The position numbers and the translations under genes were made by a program. Shown here in pieces: positions 10,541-64,000 of a stretch of 64,000 nt of DNA (position 1 is its first letter; the number at the start of each line of letters is the position of its first letter). The stretch lies in NCBI GenBank assembly GCA_053919585.1, contig CM132786.1. One strand, written 5' to 3'. The notes under the pieces are model-generated. The model was not told the DNA's origin. It saw nothing but the letters and a program-made list of their open reading frames with translations, and did no database searches. This stretch comes from Euprymna scolopes. Taxonomy: Eukaryota.

Positions 10541-10589
<49 letters not shown>

Positions 10590-10830
10590 GAGCAAACAGT
10601 CAATAAAACATGTAAAAACACACTTTGAAAAAGGGTTAAAACATATTTAATCTGAAAAGGAAACACTTGATAAGTGGACAGTCCTTAATCCGCGGAGTTT
10701 CGAAAGAAATACTTTCCTTCTCATCAGAGGCTAGGAATTAGCAAAATGCCTGATCGGATTTTGCATATAAAACAACAAGTAAGTCAAAGATCTTACTTGA
10801 TAACAAAAATGTGAAGCAGAGGGAATATGG
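10590..10830 (-). mobile_element. Penelope-like terminal repeat fragment with degenerate hammerhead
   Basis: Minus strand CTGATGA-GAAGGAAA GTA TTTCTTTC-GAAAC TCCGCGGA. Homologous to 63765-64000 and 5390-5475. Confidence 0.6.
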
Positions 10831-10879
10831 TGAATATGGTTATTTTATATATATATATATATATATATTCCTATTACTA

Positions 10880-19563: not shown

Positions 19564-20229
19564 CTACTGAAGACGAGAGCCATTCATTTCATTTGATGCC
19601 AGATGTGGATTAGAATGTTGATGATGTAAAGAGAGAAGCTTGGTTTTAGATGCATTAAAAGTAACCAGCCACTCCTTTCCCCATTGTACTACGTGCTCAA
19701 GATCAGAGGAGAGAGAATTGGAGAGAACTTGGTCGTTTACTGTCTTAGATGTGCTACCATAAATGGTAGTGCCGTCAGCATAAATGTCTACAAATGATGT
19801 AAGGATGTGATTTGGAAGATCATTAATGTAGATCAGGAAAAGAGTTGGGCCCAGGATAGACCCCTGAGGGACACCGGCATTAATACTGTGAGCTTCTGAT
19901 TTTTGCCCCTCAACTACTACTCTTATGAACCAATCAGAAAGAAATGACTTAATAATTGAGAAGACTTTTCCAGCTATACCATAGCTAGCGATCTTATGAA
20001 GTAAACCTTTATGCCACACCCTATCAAAGGCTTTAGATATGTCAAGAGCAATTGCCCTAGAAAGATTGCCACCGTCGAGAGATTTGCTAATCCTATGCAA
20101 TATAACTGTAAGCACATCTGCTGTAGATCTAGCAGAACAGAAACCATATTGAGTGTCACTAAGACGGTTATTTTTGTTGAGATGGTTGATTACTTCTGTA
20201 TTTAACACAGTTTCCAGCAACTTACTCAT
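19564..20229 (-). pseudogene. LINE reverse transcriptase core segment
   Basis: QYGF, LDISKAFD, GVPQGS and YADG (canonical YADD mutated). Confidence 0.92.
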
Positions 20230-20766
20230 GACGCACAGAAGACTTATTGACCTGTACTGAGAGGGGGATGAGCGATCACCTGAATTCTTAAATACAGGGC
20301 ATACTGATGAAATTTTCCAGGGAGATGGGAAACTATTCTCCTTAAGACAACGTTTAAACAGTTTTGTAAGTATGGGCGCTAGTTCAGGTTGAAGTTTTTT
20401 TGAGTACTATAACTGGAATACCGTCAGGGCCAGTTGCTTTACTGGAATCAAGGTTTTTGATTAGCTTGGCAACATCACATACAGATATACGTATATCACA
20501 TAGCGTGTTTTCTGATACAGGATGAAATATTGGGGGTTGGCGGCCTTGGTCGCAAAGGGTAGAATTAGCTGCAAAGTTCTTGACAAAGAGTTTGGCTTTG
20601 TCTGATGCTGACGAGATTACCTCAGGTCCATTGATAATACTTTGGATGGAGCACACGCTTCTGTTCAGGATTCTGTTTGCTATTTGCCAAAACTGGTGGG
20701 AACCAAGCCGCTGCTCAGCTACTTTGGACTTAACAGATTGAGCATACAACTCTCTTGCGTTCTTTA

Positions 20767-21852
20767 TTACTTTCTTACAATGGTTGCTGGCAGTCCTGAA
20801 AGCGGCTTTAGTTTCCATACATCTATTACGTTTGAAGCAGTGGAAAAGTGATTTCTGTGCGCAATGGCAGCAGCACATTCTGGAGAGGACCATCGCTGGC
20901 TGTTAGGTTTTTGCTGAAACTTTTTAGAGGGTATGAAACGGTCAATACCTACAATTAACCATTCAGTCAGGTCTAATACTATAGAGGACACATCCTTTTT
21001 AAACATGGAACACAGAGGTAGATCAGATATAAATGTACGGAAGATATCCCAGTCAGCCTTAGTGTATCGATATACTGTACGATGGAGAGGTACGTCTGGA
21101 GACTTACTACATTTCATTTTTATCTTAATTGATACAACAGAGTGGTCGGAAGATCCAAGAGGCGACAGAACAGAAACTGAACATAGTTCAGGGCAAGTTG
21201 TGAGAAAAAGGTCTAGTAGGCTCGCATACTGGCCGTCATTGTCGGGCACACGGGTGGGTTCCTGAACAATCTGAGTGAGGTCATAGGCAATGGAGAAATC
21301 ATGGCAGAACCTCCCCTCATCATCGGTCTTGTTTGAGTGGGTCAGCCATTCGACGTTGTGAACATTGAAGTCTCCACATACGTGAATGTTAGCAGAAGGA
21401 TAAGCATATAGGACTTGGTCAATTTTCTCAGATATGCTTTGAAAGATAGTAACTCCGCTGTTGTGGGAGCGATAGAGAGTAAATATAAATGCAGTAGTGT
21501 GAGCTAAAGCAACCCGAAAGCACATATAGGATAAGTTAGGATCTTCCCTGGAGATGTCCCTACCACATGGAAAGCTATCTTTAATATAGGCACATATTCC
21601 ATGCCCATGGCGATGTTGGGGGTCAGATTTAGAAGTTAAGTTAGAGTATCCTATAATTGCAAACTCTTCTAGGGAAATGCCAGTTTCACTTAAAAATGAA
21701 AGGTCTGGTTTAGTCTCCTGTAATTGGGTTTCAACCTCTGGAATGTTAGAACGTAGACCCCTGATGTTGGAGAAGGAGACATTGTAGTAGGGGTCTACGT
21801 TGGAAGTTGGAGAACCGGGTTTAATCGTGTATTTTTTCTTGAAACTTGTCAT
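20767..21852 (-). pseudogene. LINE apurinic-type endonuclease segment (5' part of the broken ORF)
   Basis: 361-aa ORF with all APE motifs. Continues by frameshift into 20384-20893. Confidence 0.9.
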
Positions 21853-36985: not shown

Positions 36986-37993
36986 CTAAAGATTACATAA
37001 TTTAACAATATACGAATATACATTTTTAATATTTTCTATAGCGTAAACAATATCTTAAACGCAATATATGCACAAAAGTAAATGCACAAAAGTAAATGCA
37101 CAAAATCCCATCTAAATGCATAAGGAAAAACATATATAAAACACACTTGGCTAATATGAGCATATGCGTGTAATTGTTGCATATTTCTATAATTTTTCTG
37201 GTGAACATATGCTATCAGCAAATATGTTTCTATATATTTAATGGTTTCGTAGCGAGCTTTACAGGTATGAATACAGGATACTCGTATACGAAGTGTAAGG
37301 GATACATCTAAAATAACCGTATTTGTTTAGTTTTTGTCCTGGACAGTTCCTTCCTACATATTTTATATTTTTAATGACACTTAATGATATATTCTGATAT
37401 GCATATCGGTTGCTTTACGCGGAATATTAATATATTATATGTATGCGTAACGAGCAGCTGATTCTAGGATGAGTAAGGGTCACATTAATGAAACCTGTTG
37501 CAAAATTGGTACACTCATCCATCTTAGTCTATGAAAATTAAACGCGAATAACTTTACGAGAGAATAACTCTCATAGTTAAAAGAAAAGGCTTACTTCCGG
37601 TTTCACCTCAACTGTCAGCTATAAATAATTAAACATAAATAAATTATATATAGATAAATAAAATGAATGAAAAAATCAATTTAAAATATACTTTTCAATA
37701 AATAAAACGAATAATTAAAATGATTGCATTCCAACAAATAATTACATAGAGCTAAATATTAAAATTGATTATAGACACATTGTTAATGTGTAATTTTGTA
37801 CATATTAAGTAAATTGTGACGAAATAAACACAAAGACAAGAATACAAATATTTTATAATTAGAATTTAGAATAAACATAGAAACTCACTTTTATATAATC
37901 ATACCATGCATGCATGCTTTAAAATTCATGCACATTACGTATTTATTTTAAATCGATTAATATACTAAACTCAATATAGTAATAAGATCAAAA

Positions 37994-38060
<67 letters not shown>

Positions 38061-38062
<2 letters not shown>

Positions 38063-38236
38063 ATAAATTCCACAGCCAAACAACGTCGCATCGTACAATA
38101 GGCATGACGGTCAACCAAGCGGAAGTCTAAGACTCGAGTTTCGCCCTCATTTGGGCTCATCAGTTAGACAAATCCGAACTCAGGATTCGAAACCCGAGCC
38201 TCTTGTATTCGAGGCTACCAACTGAGGAAACGCCCC
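38061..38236 (-). mobile_element. tRNA-derived SINE carrying a hammerhead ribozyme (family A)
   Basis: Minus strand: GGGGCGTTTCCTCAGTTGGTAG (A box), GGTTTCGAATCC (B box), hammerhead, then tail GCTGTGGAATTTATTA running into (TA)n. Confidence 0.85.
38125..38169 (-). ncRNA. Type I hammerhead ribozyme with intact core
   Basis: GUCUAA-CUGAUGA-GCCC AAAUGA GGGC-GAAA-C UCGA G-UC^-UUAGAC. Perfect 6-bp stem I, 4-bp stem II, palindromic minimal stem III and GUC cleavage triplet. Confidence 0.92.
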
Positions 38237-39779
38237 GCACACATGCATTTCTATAAACAAACACAGACCAAGCAAACCACGCCGAAATCCGACTGTGAAA
38301 TGAACCTACTTCGTCTCGACAATATATATATATTGATATATATAAAACTTAGGTTCTATCAGCTAAGAATTGCCTCCCCGTAAGAAAACGGGACGTTAAT
38401 GTTATCAGCCAGGAGCGAAATCGAAAAAAAGTTTTGTAAGAAAAAAAAAATAGAAAATAATGCAGAAAGCCAGGGGCGCGGACTGGAATAACTTTAATGA
38501 ATAATCAAATGAAATGAGAGGACATATTCTCACGACGCAAATTTAGCATTTTAAAACGACGGTTCGCGCACGTGCTGTTTGCAAGCAGCCTCGAAAGCAA
38601 ATGTTTTCATCTGAACTCCCTTAAAAAAGACGGCATTACTACACGAAATTAAGACGATTCTTTTTCCAATTTTTCGATATTACGTGTCCGCGAGATAGCT
38701 TTTTCTAAAGATTCCGCGTGGTGCTTGCATGATGTGGATGGTAAAGGCTTTTAGAGGATATGCGAACTCCTACATACAGACATTTGTGCATTATATTAAA
38801 GATAACAGGAAGGTGCCCGGCGTTTTCCGTTTTTGACAGCGCCGTGTAGAGGGAATAATTTGTAACATCGGGATGAGTAGGCGGCGTGGCTTGGTCGTTA
38901 AAAATGTTACAGCTGGGGCGGGGGACGTTGCCCTGTCGTAAAATCCGTTAAAATACGATAAAATTGTGTGGGGACAAAAAGCTGATAACGGGAGCGAGGA
39001 AATGAAGGCCTTGCCTTGTCATAAAGAAAAAAACATGACTTAGGTGGTAGCAACCAGAAGCAGAAAATGAATGCAAAAAAAAAGAAAAGAAAAAAAGTAG
39101 CGATGCCCGCCGCTCACGTGAATAACTCAACTTAGTAAGTGATCGCTTTATCGACGTACATGAGGACATAGTCGTCATAAGGCATCAATTTTATAATTTA
39201 AAAACGGGGAAAAACATGATTCTCGGTTAGCACACTGCGCTGAAAACCAGGATTTAATCTGACTCCCTTCAAACAAAACGAGGTTTCTACACGAAATACC
39301 GTCCTATTCTTCCCATTTGTTTGATCTATTTTGACCGGCTACATTTTTGCATGTAAAATTCGGACGAGAAAAGATTTTAGCGGACATACAAACCAACACA
39401 CAAATACACAGATGTTTGAAATTTATTTAATATATACAAGGTTTTTGGTTTGCTTTAGTTTATACTTGTAGACCTACGACTTTAGCCATCGGCCAACTAA
39501 AAGATAAGGTTAAAAATTGTGACTGTTTAGACATATATCGCCTCATAGAGGGTAGTGGAAACTGTGTAATCAATTGACAAAAAATTAATTATGGGGTCAT
39601 AATTTTCCTAAAAGACAGCTTTAGAAGAATTTTCTTAAAATATTACCATGCTGCAGTCAGTTGTAAACAAAACTACGTACCTGTGCTCTTTTCGACATAA
39701 AAAAATAAAGATAAGAAAAGAAAAAAAAAACAAGAAAGTGTCACGCCAGCGTTAAAGATTTTGCTGGTTTATAGAAGTA

Positions 39780-46380: not shown

Positions 46381-46384
<4 letters not shown>

Positions 46385-46505
46385 ATAAATTCCGCGGGCA
46401 ACTGCTGCGCCCGAATGAGGGAGAAACTTGAGTCTTGCACTTCTGGTTCGTATATTGTCATAGCTCTTGTGGGTTGCGACGTTGTTTTGCTGTGGAATTT
46501 ATTAT
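46381..46505 (+). mobile_element. 5'-truncated copy of tRNA-hammerhead SINE family A
   Basis: GCAA-CTGCTGC-GCCC GAATGA GGGA-GAAACTTGAGTC-TTGC and tail GCGACGTTGTTT.GCTGTGGAATTTATTA match 38061-38169. Core is mutated. Confidence 0.8.
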
Positions 46506-56814: not shown

Positions 56815-56861
56815 ATAACCTTCTTGGCCTTCGGGTCAAGATCAAAGTGTAGTATCTGTTC
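56815..56861 (+). ncRNA. U2: U2 snRNA 5' portion (variant), interrupted gene
   Basis: ATAACCTTCTTGGCCTTCGGGTCAAGATCAAAGTGTAGTATCTGTTC versus metazoan U2 AUCGCUUCUCGGCCUU.UGGCUAAGAUCA(A)AGUGUAGUAUCUGUUC. The invariant block AAGATCAAAGTGTAGTATCTGTTC, including GUAGUA, is exact. Confidence 0.88.
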
Positions 56862-57273
56862 CGGCAGATACTGCAAGCAAAGACCATATGTGGGGGCGAC
56901 CCCACATATAAGACCTTGGTCAATGTAGGGGCAACCCTTCATACCAATTGTCACTATCCAGCTCCCCTACTCCCCGGGGAGCTGGTCCCCATTTCCCCTT
57001 CACTCCTCACATTAAAAATCGGCCTTGTGCCTAATTTGCTCGGTGGGGGAGCAAATAAATACCATCTGTTCCGGCAGATACTGCAAGCAAAGACCATATG
57101 TGGGGGCGACCCCACATATAAGACCTTGGTCAATGTAGGGGCAACCCTTCATACCAATTGTCACTATCCAGCTCCCCTACTCCCCGGGGAGTTGGTCCCC
57201 ATTTCCCCTTCCCTCCTCACATTAAAAATCGGCCTTGTGCCTAATTTGCTCGGTGGGGGAGCAAATAAATACC
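56862..57273 (+). mobile_element. Two tandem 202-bp units inserted in U2 (candidate Utopia/Keno-dependent short element or truncated 3'UTRs)
   Basis: ATCTGTTC at 56854-56861, 57064-57071 and 57274-57281 (period 210). Units differ at 2 nt, end in AAATAAATACC, and U2 resumes as ATCTGTTCTT. Confidence 0.75.
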
Positions 57274-62619: not shown

Positions 62620-62800
62620 CTTTCACGATAAAGATAGAACCCAGAATTAGATAGAATCGAGCAATTGCATCGACAACAGACAACGCCAGACCCAAATGGG
62701 TTTAAATGTACTGCATCTCATCAGTGACGTGCTCCGACATAGGCGCGAACCCAGGTCGTCGCACTCATGACGTGTACAATACTGACGACCTAACCATACC
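62620..62800 (-). mobile_element. tRNA-derived SINE with hammerhead (family B)
   Basis: Minus strand TATGGTTAGG (A box) and GGTTCGCGCC (B box), then CGTCA-CTGATGA-GATG CAGTA CATT-TAAA-CCC ATTT GGG-TC-TGGCG at 62729-62684. G12 is mutated. Confidence 0.7.
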
Positions 62801-62913
62801 TGCATACCAGCAGTAACCATCTTAGTTGTATGACGCGTTGCTTGTCACATCGTAGAATGTAGAACTGGATAAAAGAAAGAACTTAAAAAATCGAGGCATT
62901 GTCAATAGATTGC

Positions 62914-63000
62914 GCCGTGGCCCATATGATTAGGTCGTCAGTATTGCACACTTCCTTGCTCGATTCTATCTAATTCAGGGTGCTATCTTTATCGTGAAAG
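62914..63000 (+). mobile_element. Internally deleted inverted copy of SINE family B
   Basis: TATGATTAGGTCGTCAGTATTG head joined to TTGCTCGATTCTATCTAATTC..TATCTTTATCGTGAAAG tail, the reverse complement of 62620-62665. Confidence 0.75.
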
Positions 63001-63550: not shown

Positions 63551-63612
<62 letters not shown>

Positions 63613-63764
63613 TACAATAAGTTTACCAAAGTAATCAAAATGGTAAACTTAAAATATATTATAAATATTAAAGAGTTAATATTTACAAGTAAAGTAATCT
63701 CAACCAGATGTAAAAGCTCAATAAAACCGAAAAGGAAATAGAGCATATAATATGAACAAATGAT

Positions 63765-64000
63765 TAATAAAACACGTTAAAAACATCTGGAAAAAGAGTT
63801 AAAAACATATTTTATTTTAAAAAGGAAGCACAAGATAAGTGGATAGTCCTTAATAAACGGAGTTTCTAGCAAATTCTCTTCTTCTCATCAGAGGGCAGGA
63901 ATTAGCAAAATACGGGATAGGATTTTGCATGTAAAAGTATTTAATTAAACCACAAGTATGTCACAGATCTTACTTGGTTAAATAAAAGGGTGAGGTAAGG
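63765..64000 (-). mobile_element. Penelope-like terminal repeat fragment (same family as 10590-10830)
   Basis: Shares GATAAGTGGA.AGTCCTTAAT, GGAGTTTC, CTTCTCATCAGAGG, GGAATTAGCAAAAT and AGATCTTACTTG. Confidence 0.65.

What the first reader, a model, noticed from the sequence alone, without database searches (positions are those of the whole stretch)
38061..38236. tRNA-headed SINE with a perfect hammerhead ribozyme
Seen: a ~176-nt element with Pol III A and B boxes, then a type I hammerhead with every core nucleotide intact (predicted cleavage between 38131 and 38130), then a tail running into (TA)n. Stem III is the palindrome ACUCGAGU. Known: schistosome Sm-alpha repeats combine a Pol III promoter with a hammerhead, and minimal hammerheads with palindromic stem III in Penelope-like elements and retrozymes work as dimers. 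Inference: an Sm-alpha/retrozyme-like family, probably mobilised by a Penelope-like RT, possibly undescribed in this lineage.
Basis: partly seen in the sequence, partly recalled or inferred. Interest (0 to 1): 0.8.

Follow-up and report, generated by a model that had tools for sequence, protein, structure and literature searches.

The report
Hammerhead-ribozyme retroelement copy in (TA)n
This is one solitary, somewhat worn copy of a very abundant non-coding jumping element of a mollusc genome that carries an intact-looking self-cutting hammerhead RNA motif next to a tRNA-like piece. The kind is already known from blood flukes, mussels and other animals, and this scan has met the same family many times in this genome.

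Summary
The hammerhead is real. Rfam Hammerhead_1 (type I) matches 38169-38125 on the minus strand at 45.9 bits (threshold 34, E 1.3e-8). Every core nucleotide is present, cleavage is predicted after C38131, and helix III is the palindrome ACUCGAGU.

Two parts of the description need correcting:
- The repeat is about 261 nt (38061-38321), not 176 nt. (TA)n lies on both sides, so the tRNA-like piece is internal, 85 nt from the 5' end.
- That piece is degenerate in this copy. Neither ARAGORN nor Rfam calls a tRNA, about 8 nt are missing, the A box is damaged and the B box has an extra T.

Contigs from two species show the hammerhead/B-box module at summed depths 10^4-10^5 times the unique flank.

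A second copy in the window (46400-46504) is 5'-truncated and has a dead ribozyme. It also sits in (TA)n, and a short inverted copy of its own 3' end precedes it. That is the insertion style reported for Penelope-like elements.

PolyA RNA reads showed no ends at the cleavage site and no circular joints.

Verdict: a new member of a known kind (Sm-alpha SINE-like elements, animal non-LTR retrozymes). This scan has already found the family repeatedly elsewhere in this genome. Interest is low to moderate.

The parts
37996..38060 (.). (TA)n microsatellite abutting the 3' end of the element. On the sense (minus) strand it is followed by CGTTTT at about 37990-37993, the first T4 run downstream.
38061..38124 (-). 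3' tail of the unit, ending ...GGAATTTATTA next to (TA)n. The terminal part (38058-38086) is high-copy. The middle of the tail differs from most family members.
   Evidence: (depth 395,876 against 14.3 in the flank; loose ends at 38090 and 38112-38122)
38125..38169 (-). Type I hammerhead ribozyme motif. Helix I is 6 bp and can extend by 4 bp after a 3/1 internal loop. Helix II is 4 bp with the loop AAAUGA. Helix III is 2 bp plus UCGA, i.e. the palindrome ACUCGAGU.
   Evidence: 45.9 bits, E 1.3e-8; folds; the dimer cofold forms an 8-bp intermolecular helix III, -43.3 kcal/mol
38130..38131 (-). Predicted self-cleavage site, GUC^U, after C38131.
   Evidence: Position in the Rfam alignment. Cleavage itself is not shown: no read ends pile up here in polyA RNA.
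38170..38236 (-). Degenerate tRNA-like module. A-box-like site at 38229-38218, hairpin GCCUC/GAGGC, B-box/T-arm-like site at 38195-38183 (GGGTTTCGAATCC).
   Evidence: No tRNA by ARAGORN or Rfam. Majority family members read ...GCTCAGTTGGTAGAGTGCTT... or ...GCTCAGTTGGCAGAGTGCTCGCCTCGCATG... at this place (loose ends).
38237..38321 (-). 85-nt leader that belongs to the repeat unit, upstream of the tRNA-like module. It pairs with the tail in the predicted rod-like fold.
   Evidence: depth 98,000-270,000 in 38261-38318, and contigs from two species span 38216-38305 and 38229-38309; 261-nt fold z = -2.9; not a copy of the tail in either orientation.
38322..38345 (.). Short interrupted (TA)n at the 5' side of the unit. 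With 37996-38060 it brackets the insertion.
   Evidence: single-copy depth begins at 38348
38189..38203 (-). T-arm/B-box segment that can form a 15-bp helix with 38130-38144, the hammerhead GAAAC, helix III and cleavage site. This alternative fold hides the ribozyme.
   Evidence: duplex -24.4 kcal/mol; the hammerhead-enforced fold is 10-11 kcal/mol less stable than the MFE; 47 of 1000 shuffled heads pair as well.
46400..46504 (+). Second copy of the family. It is 5'-truncated inside helix I and 80% identical. The ribozyme is dead (CUGCUGC, AGAAAC, helix III ACUUGAGU). It lies inside (TA)n.
46382..46399 (-). Short inverted copy of the element's 3' end (ATAATAAATTCC...), joined head-to-head to the truncated copy.
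   Evidence: 21 of 25 positions match the reverse complement of the copy's own tail

Best explanation
The locus is a single, moderately diverged insertion of a very abundant non-autonomous retroelement. It spans about 261 nt, 38061-38321, on the minus strand. The unit reads leader, tRNA-related module, canonical metazoan type I hammerhead, tail, and it sits inside a (TA)n microsatellite.

Shown:
- the ribozyme motif;
- the unit boundaries;
- the very high abundance in two species;
- the (TA)n context of both copies;
- the inverted 5' piece on the truncated copy.

Inferred life cycle:
1. Source copies, probably multi-unit ones, are transcribed. Transcription may start from the tRNA-like A/B boxes by Pol III. 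The sense strand has no T4 terminator in the whole unit.
2. Hammerheads of neighbouring units pair through the palindromic helix III and cut the multimer into unit-length RNA. In mussel, coral and axolotl retrozymes, a tRNA ligase circularises such RNA.
3. A Penelope-like reverse transcriptase/endonuclease copies the RNA into nicked (TA)n, with the UA-rich 3' end pairing to the target.

This particular copy is solo, has a damaged A box and an 8-nt gap in the tRNA-like part. Its most stable fold hides the hammerhead. It is most likely an inert relic whose ribozyme sequence happens to be still intact.
For: - Rfam type I hammerhead at 45.9 bits, the only one in the window. Its architecture of 6 bp / 4 bp / 2 bp plus palindromic loop is the 'canonical metazoan type I HHR' said to act as a dimer (PMC4209133). 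The dimer cofold forms the 8-bp helix III.
- The repeat extends over 38058-38318, and unique depth of 14.3 starts at 38348. The hammerhead bin sums to 1.29 million in the DNA run of the same species and 0.83 million in another species. Thousands of contigs were laid.
- Hammerhead core positions show only minor variants among the laid copies (table 3).
- (TA)n lies on both sides of copy 1 and around copy 2. Copy 2 has an inverted 3'-end piece at its truncation point. PLEs show (TA)n insertion bias and inverted 5'-truncated copies (PMC8557442). Animal retrozymes are argued to be PLE derivatives (10.64898/2026.07.22.740005).
- There are ten runs of exactly TTT and none of TTTT in the sense strand.
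- Copy 2's ribozyme has decayed, as expected for neutral relics.
Against: - No direct evidence of cleavage or circles. In polyA RNA raw reads no ends pile up at 38130/38131 and there are no back-joints. Reads fall on both strands, which looks like passenger transcription. PolyA libraries would miss Pol III or circular RNA anyway.
- Only a few 'goes back' contigs hint at tandem copies.
- No PLE is present in the window. The only reverse transcriptase there is an APE-type LINE.
- The tail could not be compared with any pLTR.
- tRNA ancestry is weak. No tRNA is called in this copy, and a rebuilt majority head is called only at a lowered ARAGORN threshold.
- The unit GC of 47.5% is slightly above the <45% quoted for retrozymes.
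- Summed contig depth is not a true copy number (the tool's own caveat).
Confidence: 0.72

Rival explanations
1. It is a classical tRNA-derived SINE mobilised by a LINE. The hammerhead is a passenger in its body, and (TA)n is the target or tail preference of a microsatellite-specific LINE.
For: An APE-endonuclease plus RVT_1 LINE lies in the same window. LINE twin priming can also make inverted 5' pieces. A/B-box-like motifs are present.
Against: The repeat unit begins 85 nt upstream of the tRNA-like part. There is no A-rich or recognisable LINE-like tail. The combination of hammerhead, (TA)n and an inverted truncated copy is the published PLE signature (PMC8557442, PMC4209133).
Confidence: 0.12
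2. It is a solo fragment of the pseudo-LTR of an autonomous Penelope-like element, not a dedicated non-autonomous family.
For: PLE pLTRs carry hammerheads and insert in microsatellites (PMC4209133, PMC8557442). Xenopus retrozymes are sister to pLTRs.
Against: PLE hammerheads are mostly the 'minimal' type with a long helix II and no helix III, whereas this one is the canonical type found in retrozymes and Sm-alpha. Contigs from two species share the same short unit bounded by (TA)n. The unit has a tRNA-like module.
Confidence: 0.1
3. It is a host-functional hammerhead, a cis-acting RNA-processing element of a local gene, or part of a satellite amplified by recombination rather than retroposition.
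For: The core is intact despite roughly 5-7% divergence elsewhere. Some conserved intronic hammerheads exist in animals (my own knowledge).
Against: Abundance is 10^4-10^5 fold over the flank, with dispersed solo and truncated copies. The flank is absent in the second species while the element is abundant there. With 1 of 45 hammerhead positions differing from the majority against about 16 of 216 elsewhere, there is no significant excess of conservation (my estimate P about 0.16).
Confidence: 0.04

Closest known systems
Schistosoma Sm-alpha / Sj-alpha SINE-like elements (Ferbeyre et al. 1998; Laha et al. 2000; as summarised in PMC2770079 and PMC8490949)
   Same: A short non-coding high-copy element that combines a tRNA-related Pol III-type module with a downstream type I hammerhead having a very short helix III. 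It occurs as dispersed copies in the thousands to tens of thousands.
   Different: The phylum differs (mollusc, by run labels and earlier notes, against flatworm). The unit is about 261 nt against 335 nt. In Sm-alpha, tRNAscan calls a tRNA-Gln-like gene, whereas here no tRNA is called and the family head looks Ala(CGC)- or Ser(CGA)-like at best. The tRNA-like part is internal to the unit. Insertion is in (TA)n. Sequence homology to Sm-alpha was not tested, because no Sm-alpha sequence was available to the tools.
Animal non-LTR retrozymes (Cervera & de la Pena 2020, PMC7229834; review PMC7761336)
   Same: Non-coding units of 170-400 nt carrying the canonical metazoan type I hammerhead. A highly self-paired rod-like fold is predicted. 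They are found in molluscs (mussel) and are thought to depend on PLE machinery.
   Different: Retrozymes are defined as tandem repeats that release circular RNA. This locus is a single unit, and no circular joints were seen in the one RNA data set laid. The described retrozymes are not reported to carry tRNA-like A/B boxes (no such mention). GC is 47.5% against <45%.
Penelope-like element pseudo-LTRs and their minimal hammerheads (PMC4209133; PMC8557442)
   Same: Hammerhead-bearing terminal sequence, (TA)n insertion bias, and an inverted 5'-truncated partner copy.
   Different: The hammerhead is the canonical type (helix II 4 bp, helix III present), not the minimal type. There is no RT/GIY-YIG ORF nearby. 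A separate repeat in this window (10587-10850 and 63610-64000) does carry a minimal-type motif.

Membership tests
Hammerhead ribozyme, type I (Rfam RF00163) | Covariance-model score at or above the curated gathering score, with the full model matched | tested here: met
   45.9 bits against 34, model positions 1-45 of 45, E 1.3e-8
Hammerhead ribozyme, type I (Rfam RF00163) | Conserved core CUGAUGA ... GAAA, and an H (not G) before the cleavage site | tested here: met
   CUGAUGA at 38163-38157, GAAA at 38142-38139, GUC^U at 38133-38130
Hammerhead ribozyme, type I (Rfam RF00163) | Self-cleavage activity | not testable with these tools
   Needs in vitro transcription. PolyA reads show no ends at the site, which is not informative for a non-polyadenylated RNA.
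Canonical metazoan type I HHR (dimer-active; PMC4209133) | Helix I 6 bp, helix II 4 bp, helix III 1-2 bp capped by a small palindromic loop | tested here: met
   6 bp / 4 bp / 2 bp plus UCGA. The dimer cofold makes an 8-bp helix III.
Sm-alpha-like SINE | tRNA-derived region with Pol III A and B boxes, recognisable as tRNA-like | tested here: inconclusive
   This copy has no tRNA by ARAGORN or Rfam, the A box has C at position 10, and the B box has an extra T. The family majority has a better D-arm/A box, but it is called as a tRNA only at a lowered threshold.
Sm-alpha-like SINE | Hammerhead downstream of the tRNA-like region in the same orientation | tested here: met
   The B-box-like site ends at 38183 and the hammerhead starts at 38169, both on the minus strand.
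Sm-alpha-like SINE | Sequence homology to Sm-alpha outside the ribozyme core | not tested
   No Sm-alpha sequence was available in the tools. Ferbeyre 1998 is not held.
Animal non-LTR retrozyme | Tandem arrangement (two or more units), each with a hammerhead, so that a monomer can be excised | tested here: not met
   There is one unit and one hammerhead at this locus. At family level only a few 'goes back' contigs were seen. Earlier scan notes report 283-337-bp arrays elsewhere; I did not check them.
Animal non-LTR retrozyme | Unit of about 170-400 nt, non-coding, with a highly self-paired fold | tested here: met
   261 nt. MFE -88.6 kcal/mol, z = -2.9. No ORF of 130 aa or more overlaps it.
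Animal non-LTR retrozyme | Expressed as circular RNA | tested here: inconclusive
   No back-joints in raw polyA reads. PolyA selection is the wrong library for this test.
PLE-dependent non-autonomous element | Insertion bias for microsatellites, with target-site duplications not discernible | tested here: met
   Both copies in the window are embedded in (TA)n. Compare PMC8557442.
PLE-dependent non-autonomous element | Inverted 5'-truncated partner copy at the 5' side | tested here: met
   Met for copy 2 only: 46382-46399 is the reverse complement of its own 3' end. Not seen at copy 1.
PLE-dependent non-autonomous element | Terminal sequence shared with the pLTR of an autonomous PLE of the same genome | not testable with these tools
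Classical LINE-dependent tRNA-SINE | tRNA-related head at the very 5' end of the retroposed unit, and an A-rich or LINE-derived 3' tail | tested here: not met
   The 85-nt leader upstream of the tRNA-like part is part of the repeat. The tail ends GGAATTTATTA followed by (TA)n.

The most novel reading that the evidence does not exclude
The family is a true hybrid: a Pol III-driven, tRNA-derived promoter module built into a Penelope-dependent hammerhead retrozyme, kept at 10^4-10^5 copies in several cephalopod species. In this reading the T-arm/B box, with its extra U giving GUUUCG, doubles as a complementary 'attenuator' of the hammerhead core (CGAAAC plus helix III plus the cleavage site). The same 15 nt would then serve as TFIIIC site in DNA and as a conformational switch that controls self-cleavage in RNA.
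Probability: 0.12. Interest if true: 0.55.

Novelty: new member of a known kind. Interest (0 to 1): 0.3.

Why it matters
Hammerhead-bearing retroelements are the main home of self-cleaving ribozymes in animal genomes, and how they are transcribed and copied is still largely inferred. A family that carries its own tRNA-type promoter module next to a canonical hammerhead would be a convenient system for two questions: whether Pol III drives retrozyme RNA, and whether Penelope-like enzymes copy it. The family is hugely abundant, shared between species and inserts in (TA)n. This single locus adds little beyond another example. The value lies in the family, which this scan has already reported from other parts of the same genome.

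Tried and rejected
1. My first motif search used the wrong helix II spacing and found nothing. It was superseded by Rfam.
2. ARAGORN at default and relaxed thresholds on this copy gave no credible tRNA. At ps60 it returned only a nonsense 84-nt call.
3. I tested whether the 85-nt leader is an inverted or direct copy of the tail. Local alignment was no better than shuffles (p 0.30 and 0.51), so this was rejected.
4. A scan of metagenome contigs for B box plus hammerhead gave 3 hits. All are GC-rich bacterial coding sequence matching by chance, so no extra family copies were obtained. No covariation analysis of the helices was therefore possible.
5. A protein-atlas search with the window's LINE RT, meant to pin the taxon, was uninformative.
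6. Ferbeyre 1998 and Lunse 2017 are not held.
7. I looked for evidence of selection on this copy's ribozyme. One of 45 hammerhead positions differs from the majority, against about 16 of 216 elsewhere. This is not significant.
8. 'Copies ending at the cleavage site' in organism C (loose ends at 38129/38130) turned out to be diverged but homologous tails, not ribozyme-cut ends.

Full report
**1. The observation**

On the minus strand, Rfam's type I hammerhead model (RF00163) matches 38169..38125 over its full length. The score is 45.9 bits against a gathering score of 34, with E 1.3e-8 for the whole 64-kb window. It is the only hammerhead hit in the window, even at E<=5.

Reading the strand gives:
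- helix I GUCUAA/UUAGAC (6 bp);
- the core CUGAUGA;
- helix II GCCC/GGGC with loop AAAUGA;
- GAAA;
- helix III A-U and C-G closed by UCGA, which together form the palindrome ACUCGAGU;
- the cleavage triplet GUC, followed by U38130.

Helix I can be extended by four more pairs (CGGA/UCCG) after a 3/1 internal loop. Two copies co-fold with an 8-bp intermolecular helix III at -43.3 kcal/mol.

This is the 'canonical metazoan type I HHR' of Cervera and de la Pena: helix I 6 bp, helix II 4 bp, helix III 1-2 bp with a small palindromic loop. That type is poorly active alone and active as a dimer when a second copy is near (PMC4209133).

**2. What needs correcting**

I laid contigs and reads of four public runs on 38058-38900. 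The single-copy flank (k-mer depth 14.3 in the DNA run of the same species) begins only at 38348. Everything from 38058 to 38318 is at repeat depth. For example, 38261-38318 stands at 98,000-270,000, and contigs from two species bridge 38216-38305 and 38229-38309.

The inserted unit is therefore about 261 nt (38061-38321). An 85-nt leader lies upstream of the tRNA-like part, and a second, shorter (TA)n (38322-38345) lies on the 5' side. The element splits a (TA)n microsatellite rather than merely ending in one.

The 'tRNA head' is weak in this copy:
- ARAGORN finds nothing.
- Rfam's tRNA model gives nothing even at E<=10.
- The A-box-like site has C where G10 should be.
- The B-box-like site reads GGGTTTCGAATCC, with one T too many.

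The loose-end consensuses show that most family members continue with ...GCTCAGTTGGTAGAGTGCTT... or ...GCTCAGTTGGCAGAGTGCTCGCCTCGCATG... behind 38215 and 38205. That is a proper D-arm and an anticodon-arm-like hairpin. By eye it looks Ala(CGC)-like. ARAGORN calls a rebuilt version Ser(CGA), and only at a lowered threshold. This copy lacks about 8 nt there.

So the family's module is tRNA-related, this copy's module is damaged, and in no case is it the 5' end of the unit.

**3. Abundance, spread and age**

The bin holding the hammerhead core sums to 1.29 million in the same-species DNA run and 0.83 million in a DNA run of another species. In that second species the flanks are absent. Thousands of contigs were laid (8,039 and 5,553).

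The tool warns that summed contig depth is not a copy number, so I take it only as 'order 10^4-10^5'. The hammerhead/B-box module (38120-38215) is shared by more copies than the leader and tail, which suggests several subfamilies.

Runs labelled as four further organisms, and as 'mollusc metagenome', hold 31-mers of the element. This fits the earlier scan notes that call the genome a large cephalopod/mollusc genome. I did not verify the taxon independently (one search was uninformative).

At about 17 listed positions the majority of laid copies carry another letter than this copy. At several of them (38109, 38206, 38255, 38268) nearly all do. This copy therefore has private changes of roughly 5-7% plus the 8-nt gap, and is not young. 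Only one of the 45 hammerhead positions (38128, in helix I) differs from the majority. That is not a significant excess of conservation.

**4. A second copy and the insertion style**

A sensitive blastn of the 261-nt unit against the window found one more copy at 46400-46504 on the plus strand, 80% identical. Its features:
- It is 5'-truncated inside helix I.
- Its ribozyme is dead: CUGCUGC, AGAAAC, and helix III ACUUGAGU.
- It lies in (TA)n.
- Directly in front of it, 46382-46399 is the reverse complement of its own 3' end (ATAATAAATTCC..., 21 of 25 positions).

Microsatellite targets are described for Penelope-like elements: (TA)n for Naiads, and a proposed link for Neptune. So are undetectable target-site duplications and an inverted 5'-truncated copy next to the insertion (PMC8557442). 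The window holds no PLE. Its one reverse transcriptase is an APE-type LINE at 19564-21852, and twin priming by LINEs can also invert 5' ends.

**5. How it most likely works**

What is shown: the motif, the boundaries, the abundance and the insertion context. The rest is inferred from the published families.

The leader belongs to the unit, so the template RNA cannot be a simple Pol III transcript starting at the tRNA-like +1 of a solo copy. It fits better with transcripts of multi-unit copies, or with circular RNA, as in retrozymes.

The sense strand has ten runs of exactly TTT and none of TTTT. By my rough estimate the chance is about 0.02. A Pol III transcript could therefore run through whole units. 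At this solo locus the first T4 comes just past the 3' (TA)n.

The published model then runs as follows. Neighbouring hammerheads dimerise through helix III and cut. Unit-length RNA with 5'-OH and 2',3'-cyclic phosphate ends is circularised by an RtcB-type tRNA ligase (PMC7229834). A PLE enzyme then copies it into nicked (TA)n, with the UA-rich end pairing to the target.

For this copy the predicted most stable fold does not contain the hammerhead. A 15-bp helix (-24.4 kcal/mol) pairs the T-arm/B-box segment 38189-38203 with 38130-38144, which covers GAAAC, helix III and the cleavage site. Forcing the hammerhead costs 10-11 kcal/mol. The extra T of the B box is what makes GUUUCG complementary to CGAAAC. 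Against shuffled heads the pairing is only marginally unusual (47 of 1000), so I report it as an idea and not as a finding.

**6. Expression**

In raw polyA RNA reads of the same species, 1,888 reads matched. They fall on both strands, and none falls on the unique flank. No ends pile up at the cleavage site, and no back-joints were listed. About 1,100 of the reads come from one abundant transcript that contains a fragment like the tail end (38058-38090, with 38084 T).

This looks like passenger transcription of other copies. PolyA libraries cannot test for Pol III or circular RNA, so the negative result is weak. 'RNA?' contig runs hold the family at high depth, but DNA carry-over cannot be excluded.

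**7. Comparison and novelty**

The closest known things are:
- Schistosoma Sm-alpha/Sj-alpha SINE-like elements: a tRNA-like Pol III module plus a type I hammerhead, more than 10^4 copies (PMC2770079, PMC8490949).
- Animal non-LTR retrozymes from mussel, coral and axolotl (PMC7229834, PMC7761336).

This locus fails the tandem criterion for a retrozyme, and this copy fails a tRNA call, so I file it as working like these elements. The family is best described as a new member of that known kind.

I found no paper describing it in cephalopods. The giant squid genome paper only counts 235 Hammerhead_1 hits (PMC6962438). Other searches came back empty. Dfam and Repbase could not be searched.

The scan itself has already reported this family, or close relatives, many times on other DNA of this genome, with the same verdict. 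Examples are s1-288415, s1-244832, s1-247297, s1-263274, s1-279839 and s1-259186.

**8. Verdict**

The ribozyme motif is real and the mobile-element family is real. This individual copy is most likely an inert relic. Interest is 0.3.

Noticed in passing
window 46382-46504: Second copy of the same family, 5'-truncated and with a dead ribozyme, inside (TA)n. An inverted piece of about 18 nt from its own 3' end is joined to the truncation point.
   Followed up: yes
window 10587-10850 (-) and 63610-64000 (-): Two homologous copies (about 71% column identity) of a different repeat. It carries a Penelope-type 'minimal' hammerhead-like motif: CUGAUGAG, an 8-bp helix II, then CGAAAC with no helix III. 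One copy is flanked by (TA)n on both sides and the other ends on (TA)n. Rfam does not call it.
   Followed up: partly
whole window: There are 27 (TA)n tracts of 16 bp or more in 64 kb. Many come in pairs 90-530 bp apart, for example 6357/6673, 10544/10846, 29677/29888, 35558/35931/36096 and 46186/46306/46525. It looks as if microsatellites were repeatedly split by short insertions.
   Followed up: partly
window 38189-38203 with 38130-38144: A 15-bp complementarity joins the B-box/T-arm segment to the hammerhead's GAAAC, helix III and cleavage site. The extra T of the B box creates the GUUUCG/CGAAAC match. In another species the major variant at 38199 (G to A on the sense strand) would turn a G-U of this helix into A-U while breaking the tRNA-like hairpin.
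   Followed up: partly
window 19564-21852 (-): Decayed LINE. It has an APE-type endonuclease (Exo_endo_phos_2) and an RVT_1 reverse transcriptase, split over three ORFs.
   Followed up: no
window 62620-63000: An island between two N runs has CTGATGAG on the minus strand near a B-box-like GGGTTCGCGCC. Another first-reader note calls it a second tRNA-hammerhead family. Rfam gives no hammerhead there even at E<=5, and it has no blastn similarity to the 261-nt unit.
   Followed up: partly
window 38058-38090 (family copies elsewhere): In one polyA RNA run about 1,100 reads come from a single abundant transcript. It holds a fragment like the tail end of the element (T at 38084) and then continues with the majority tail sequence.
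   Followed up: no
contigs laid on 38077-38169 (tables 5 and 5c): Rare family variants lack all or the 3' half of the hammerhead. In one, the tail is joined directly to the 5' strand of helix I.
   Followed up: no
window 56816-56940: A U2 snRNA-like match lies just below Rfam's threshold (40.2 against 46 bits). Other notes of this scan treat it as a U2-headed SINE.
   Followed up: no
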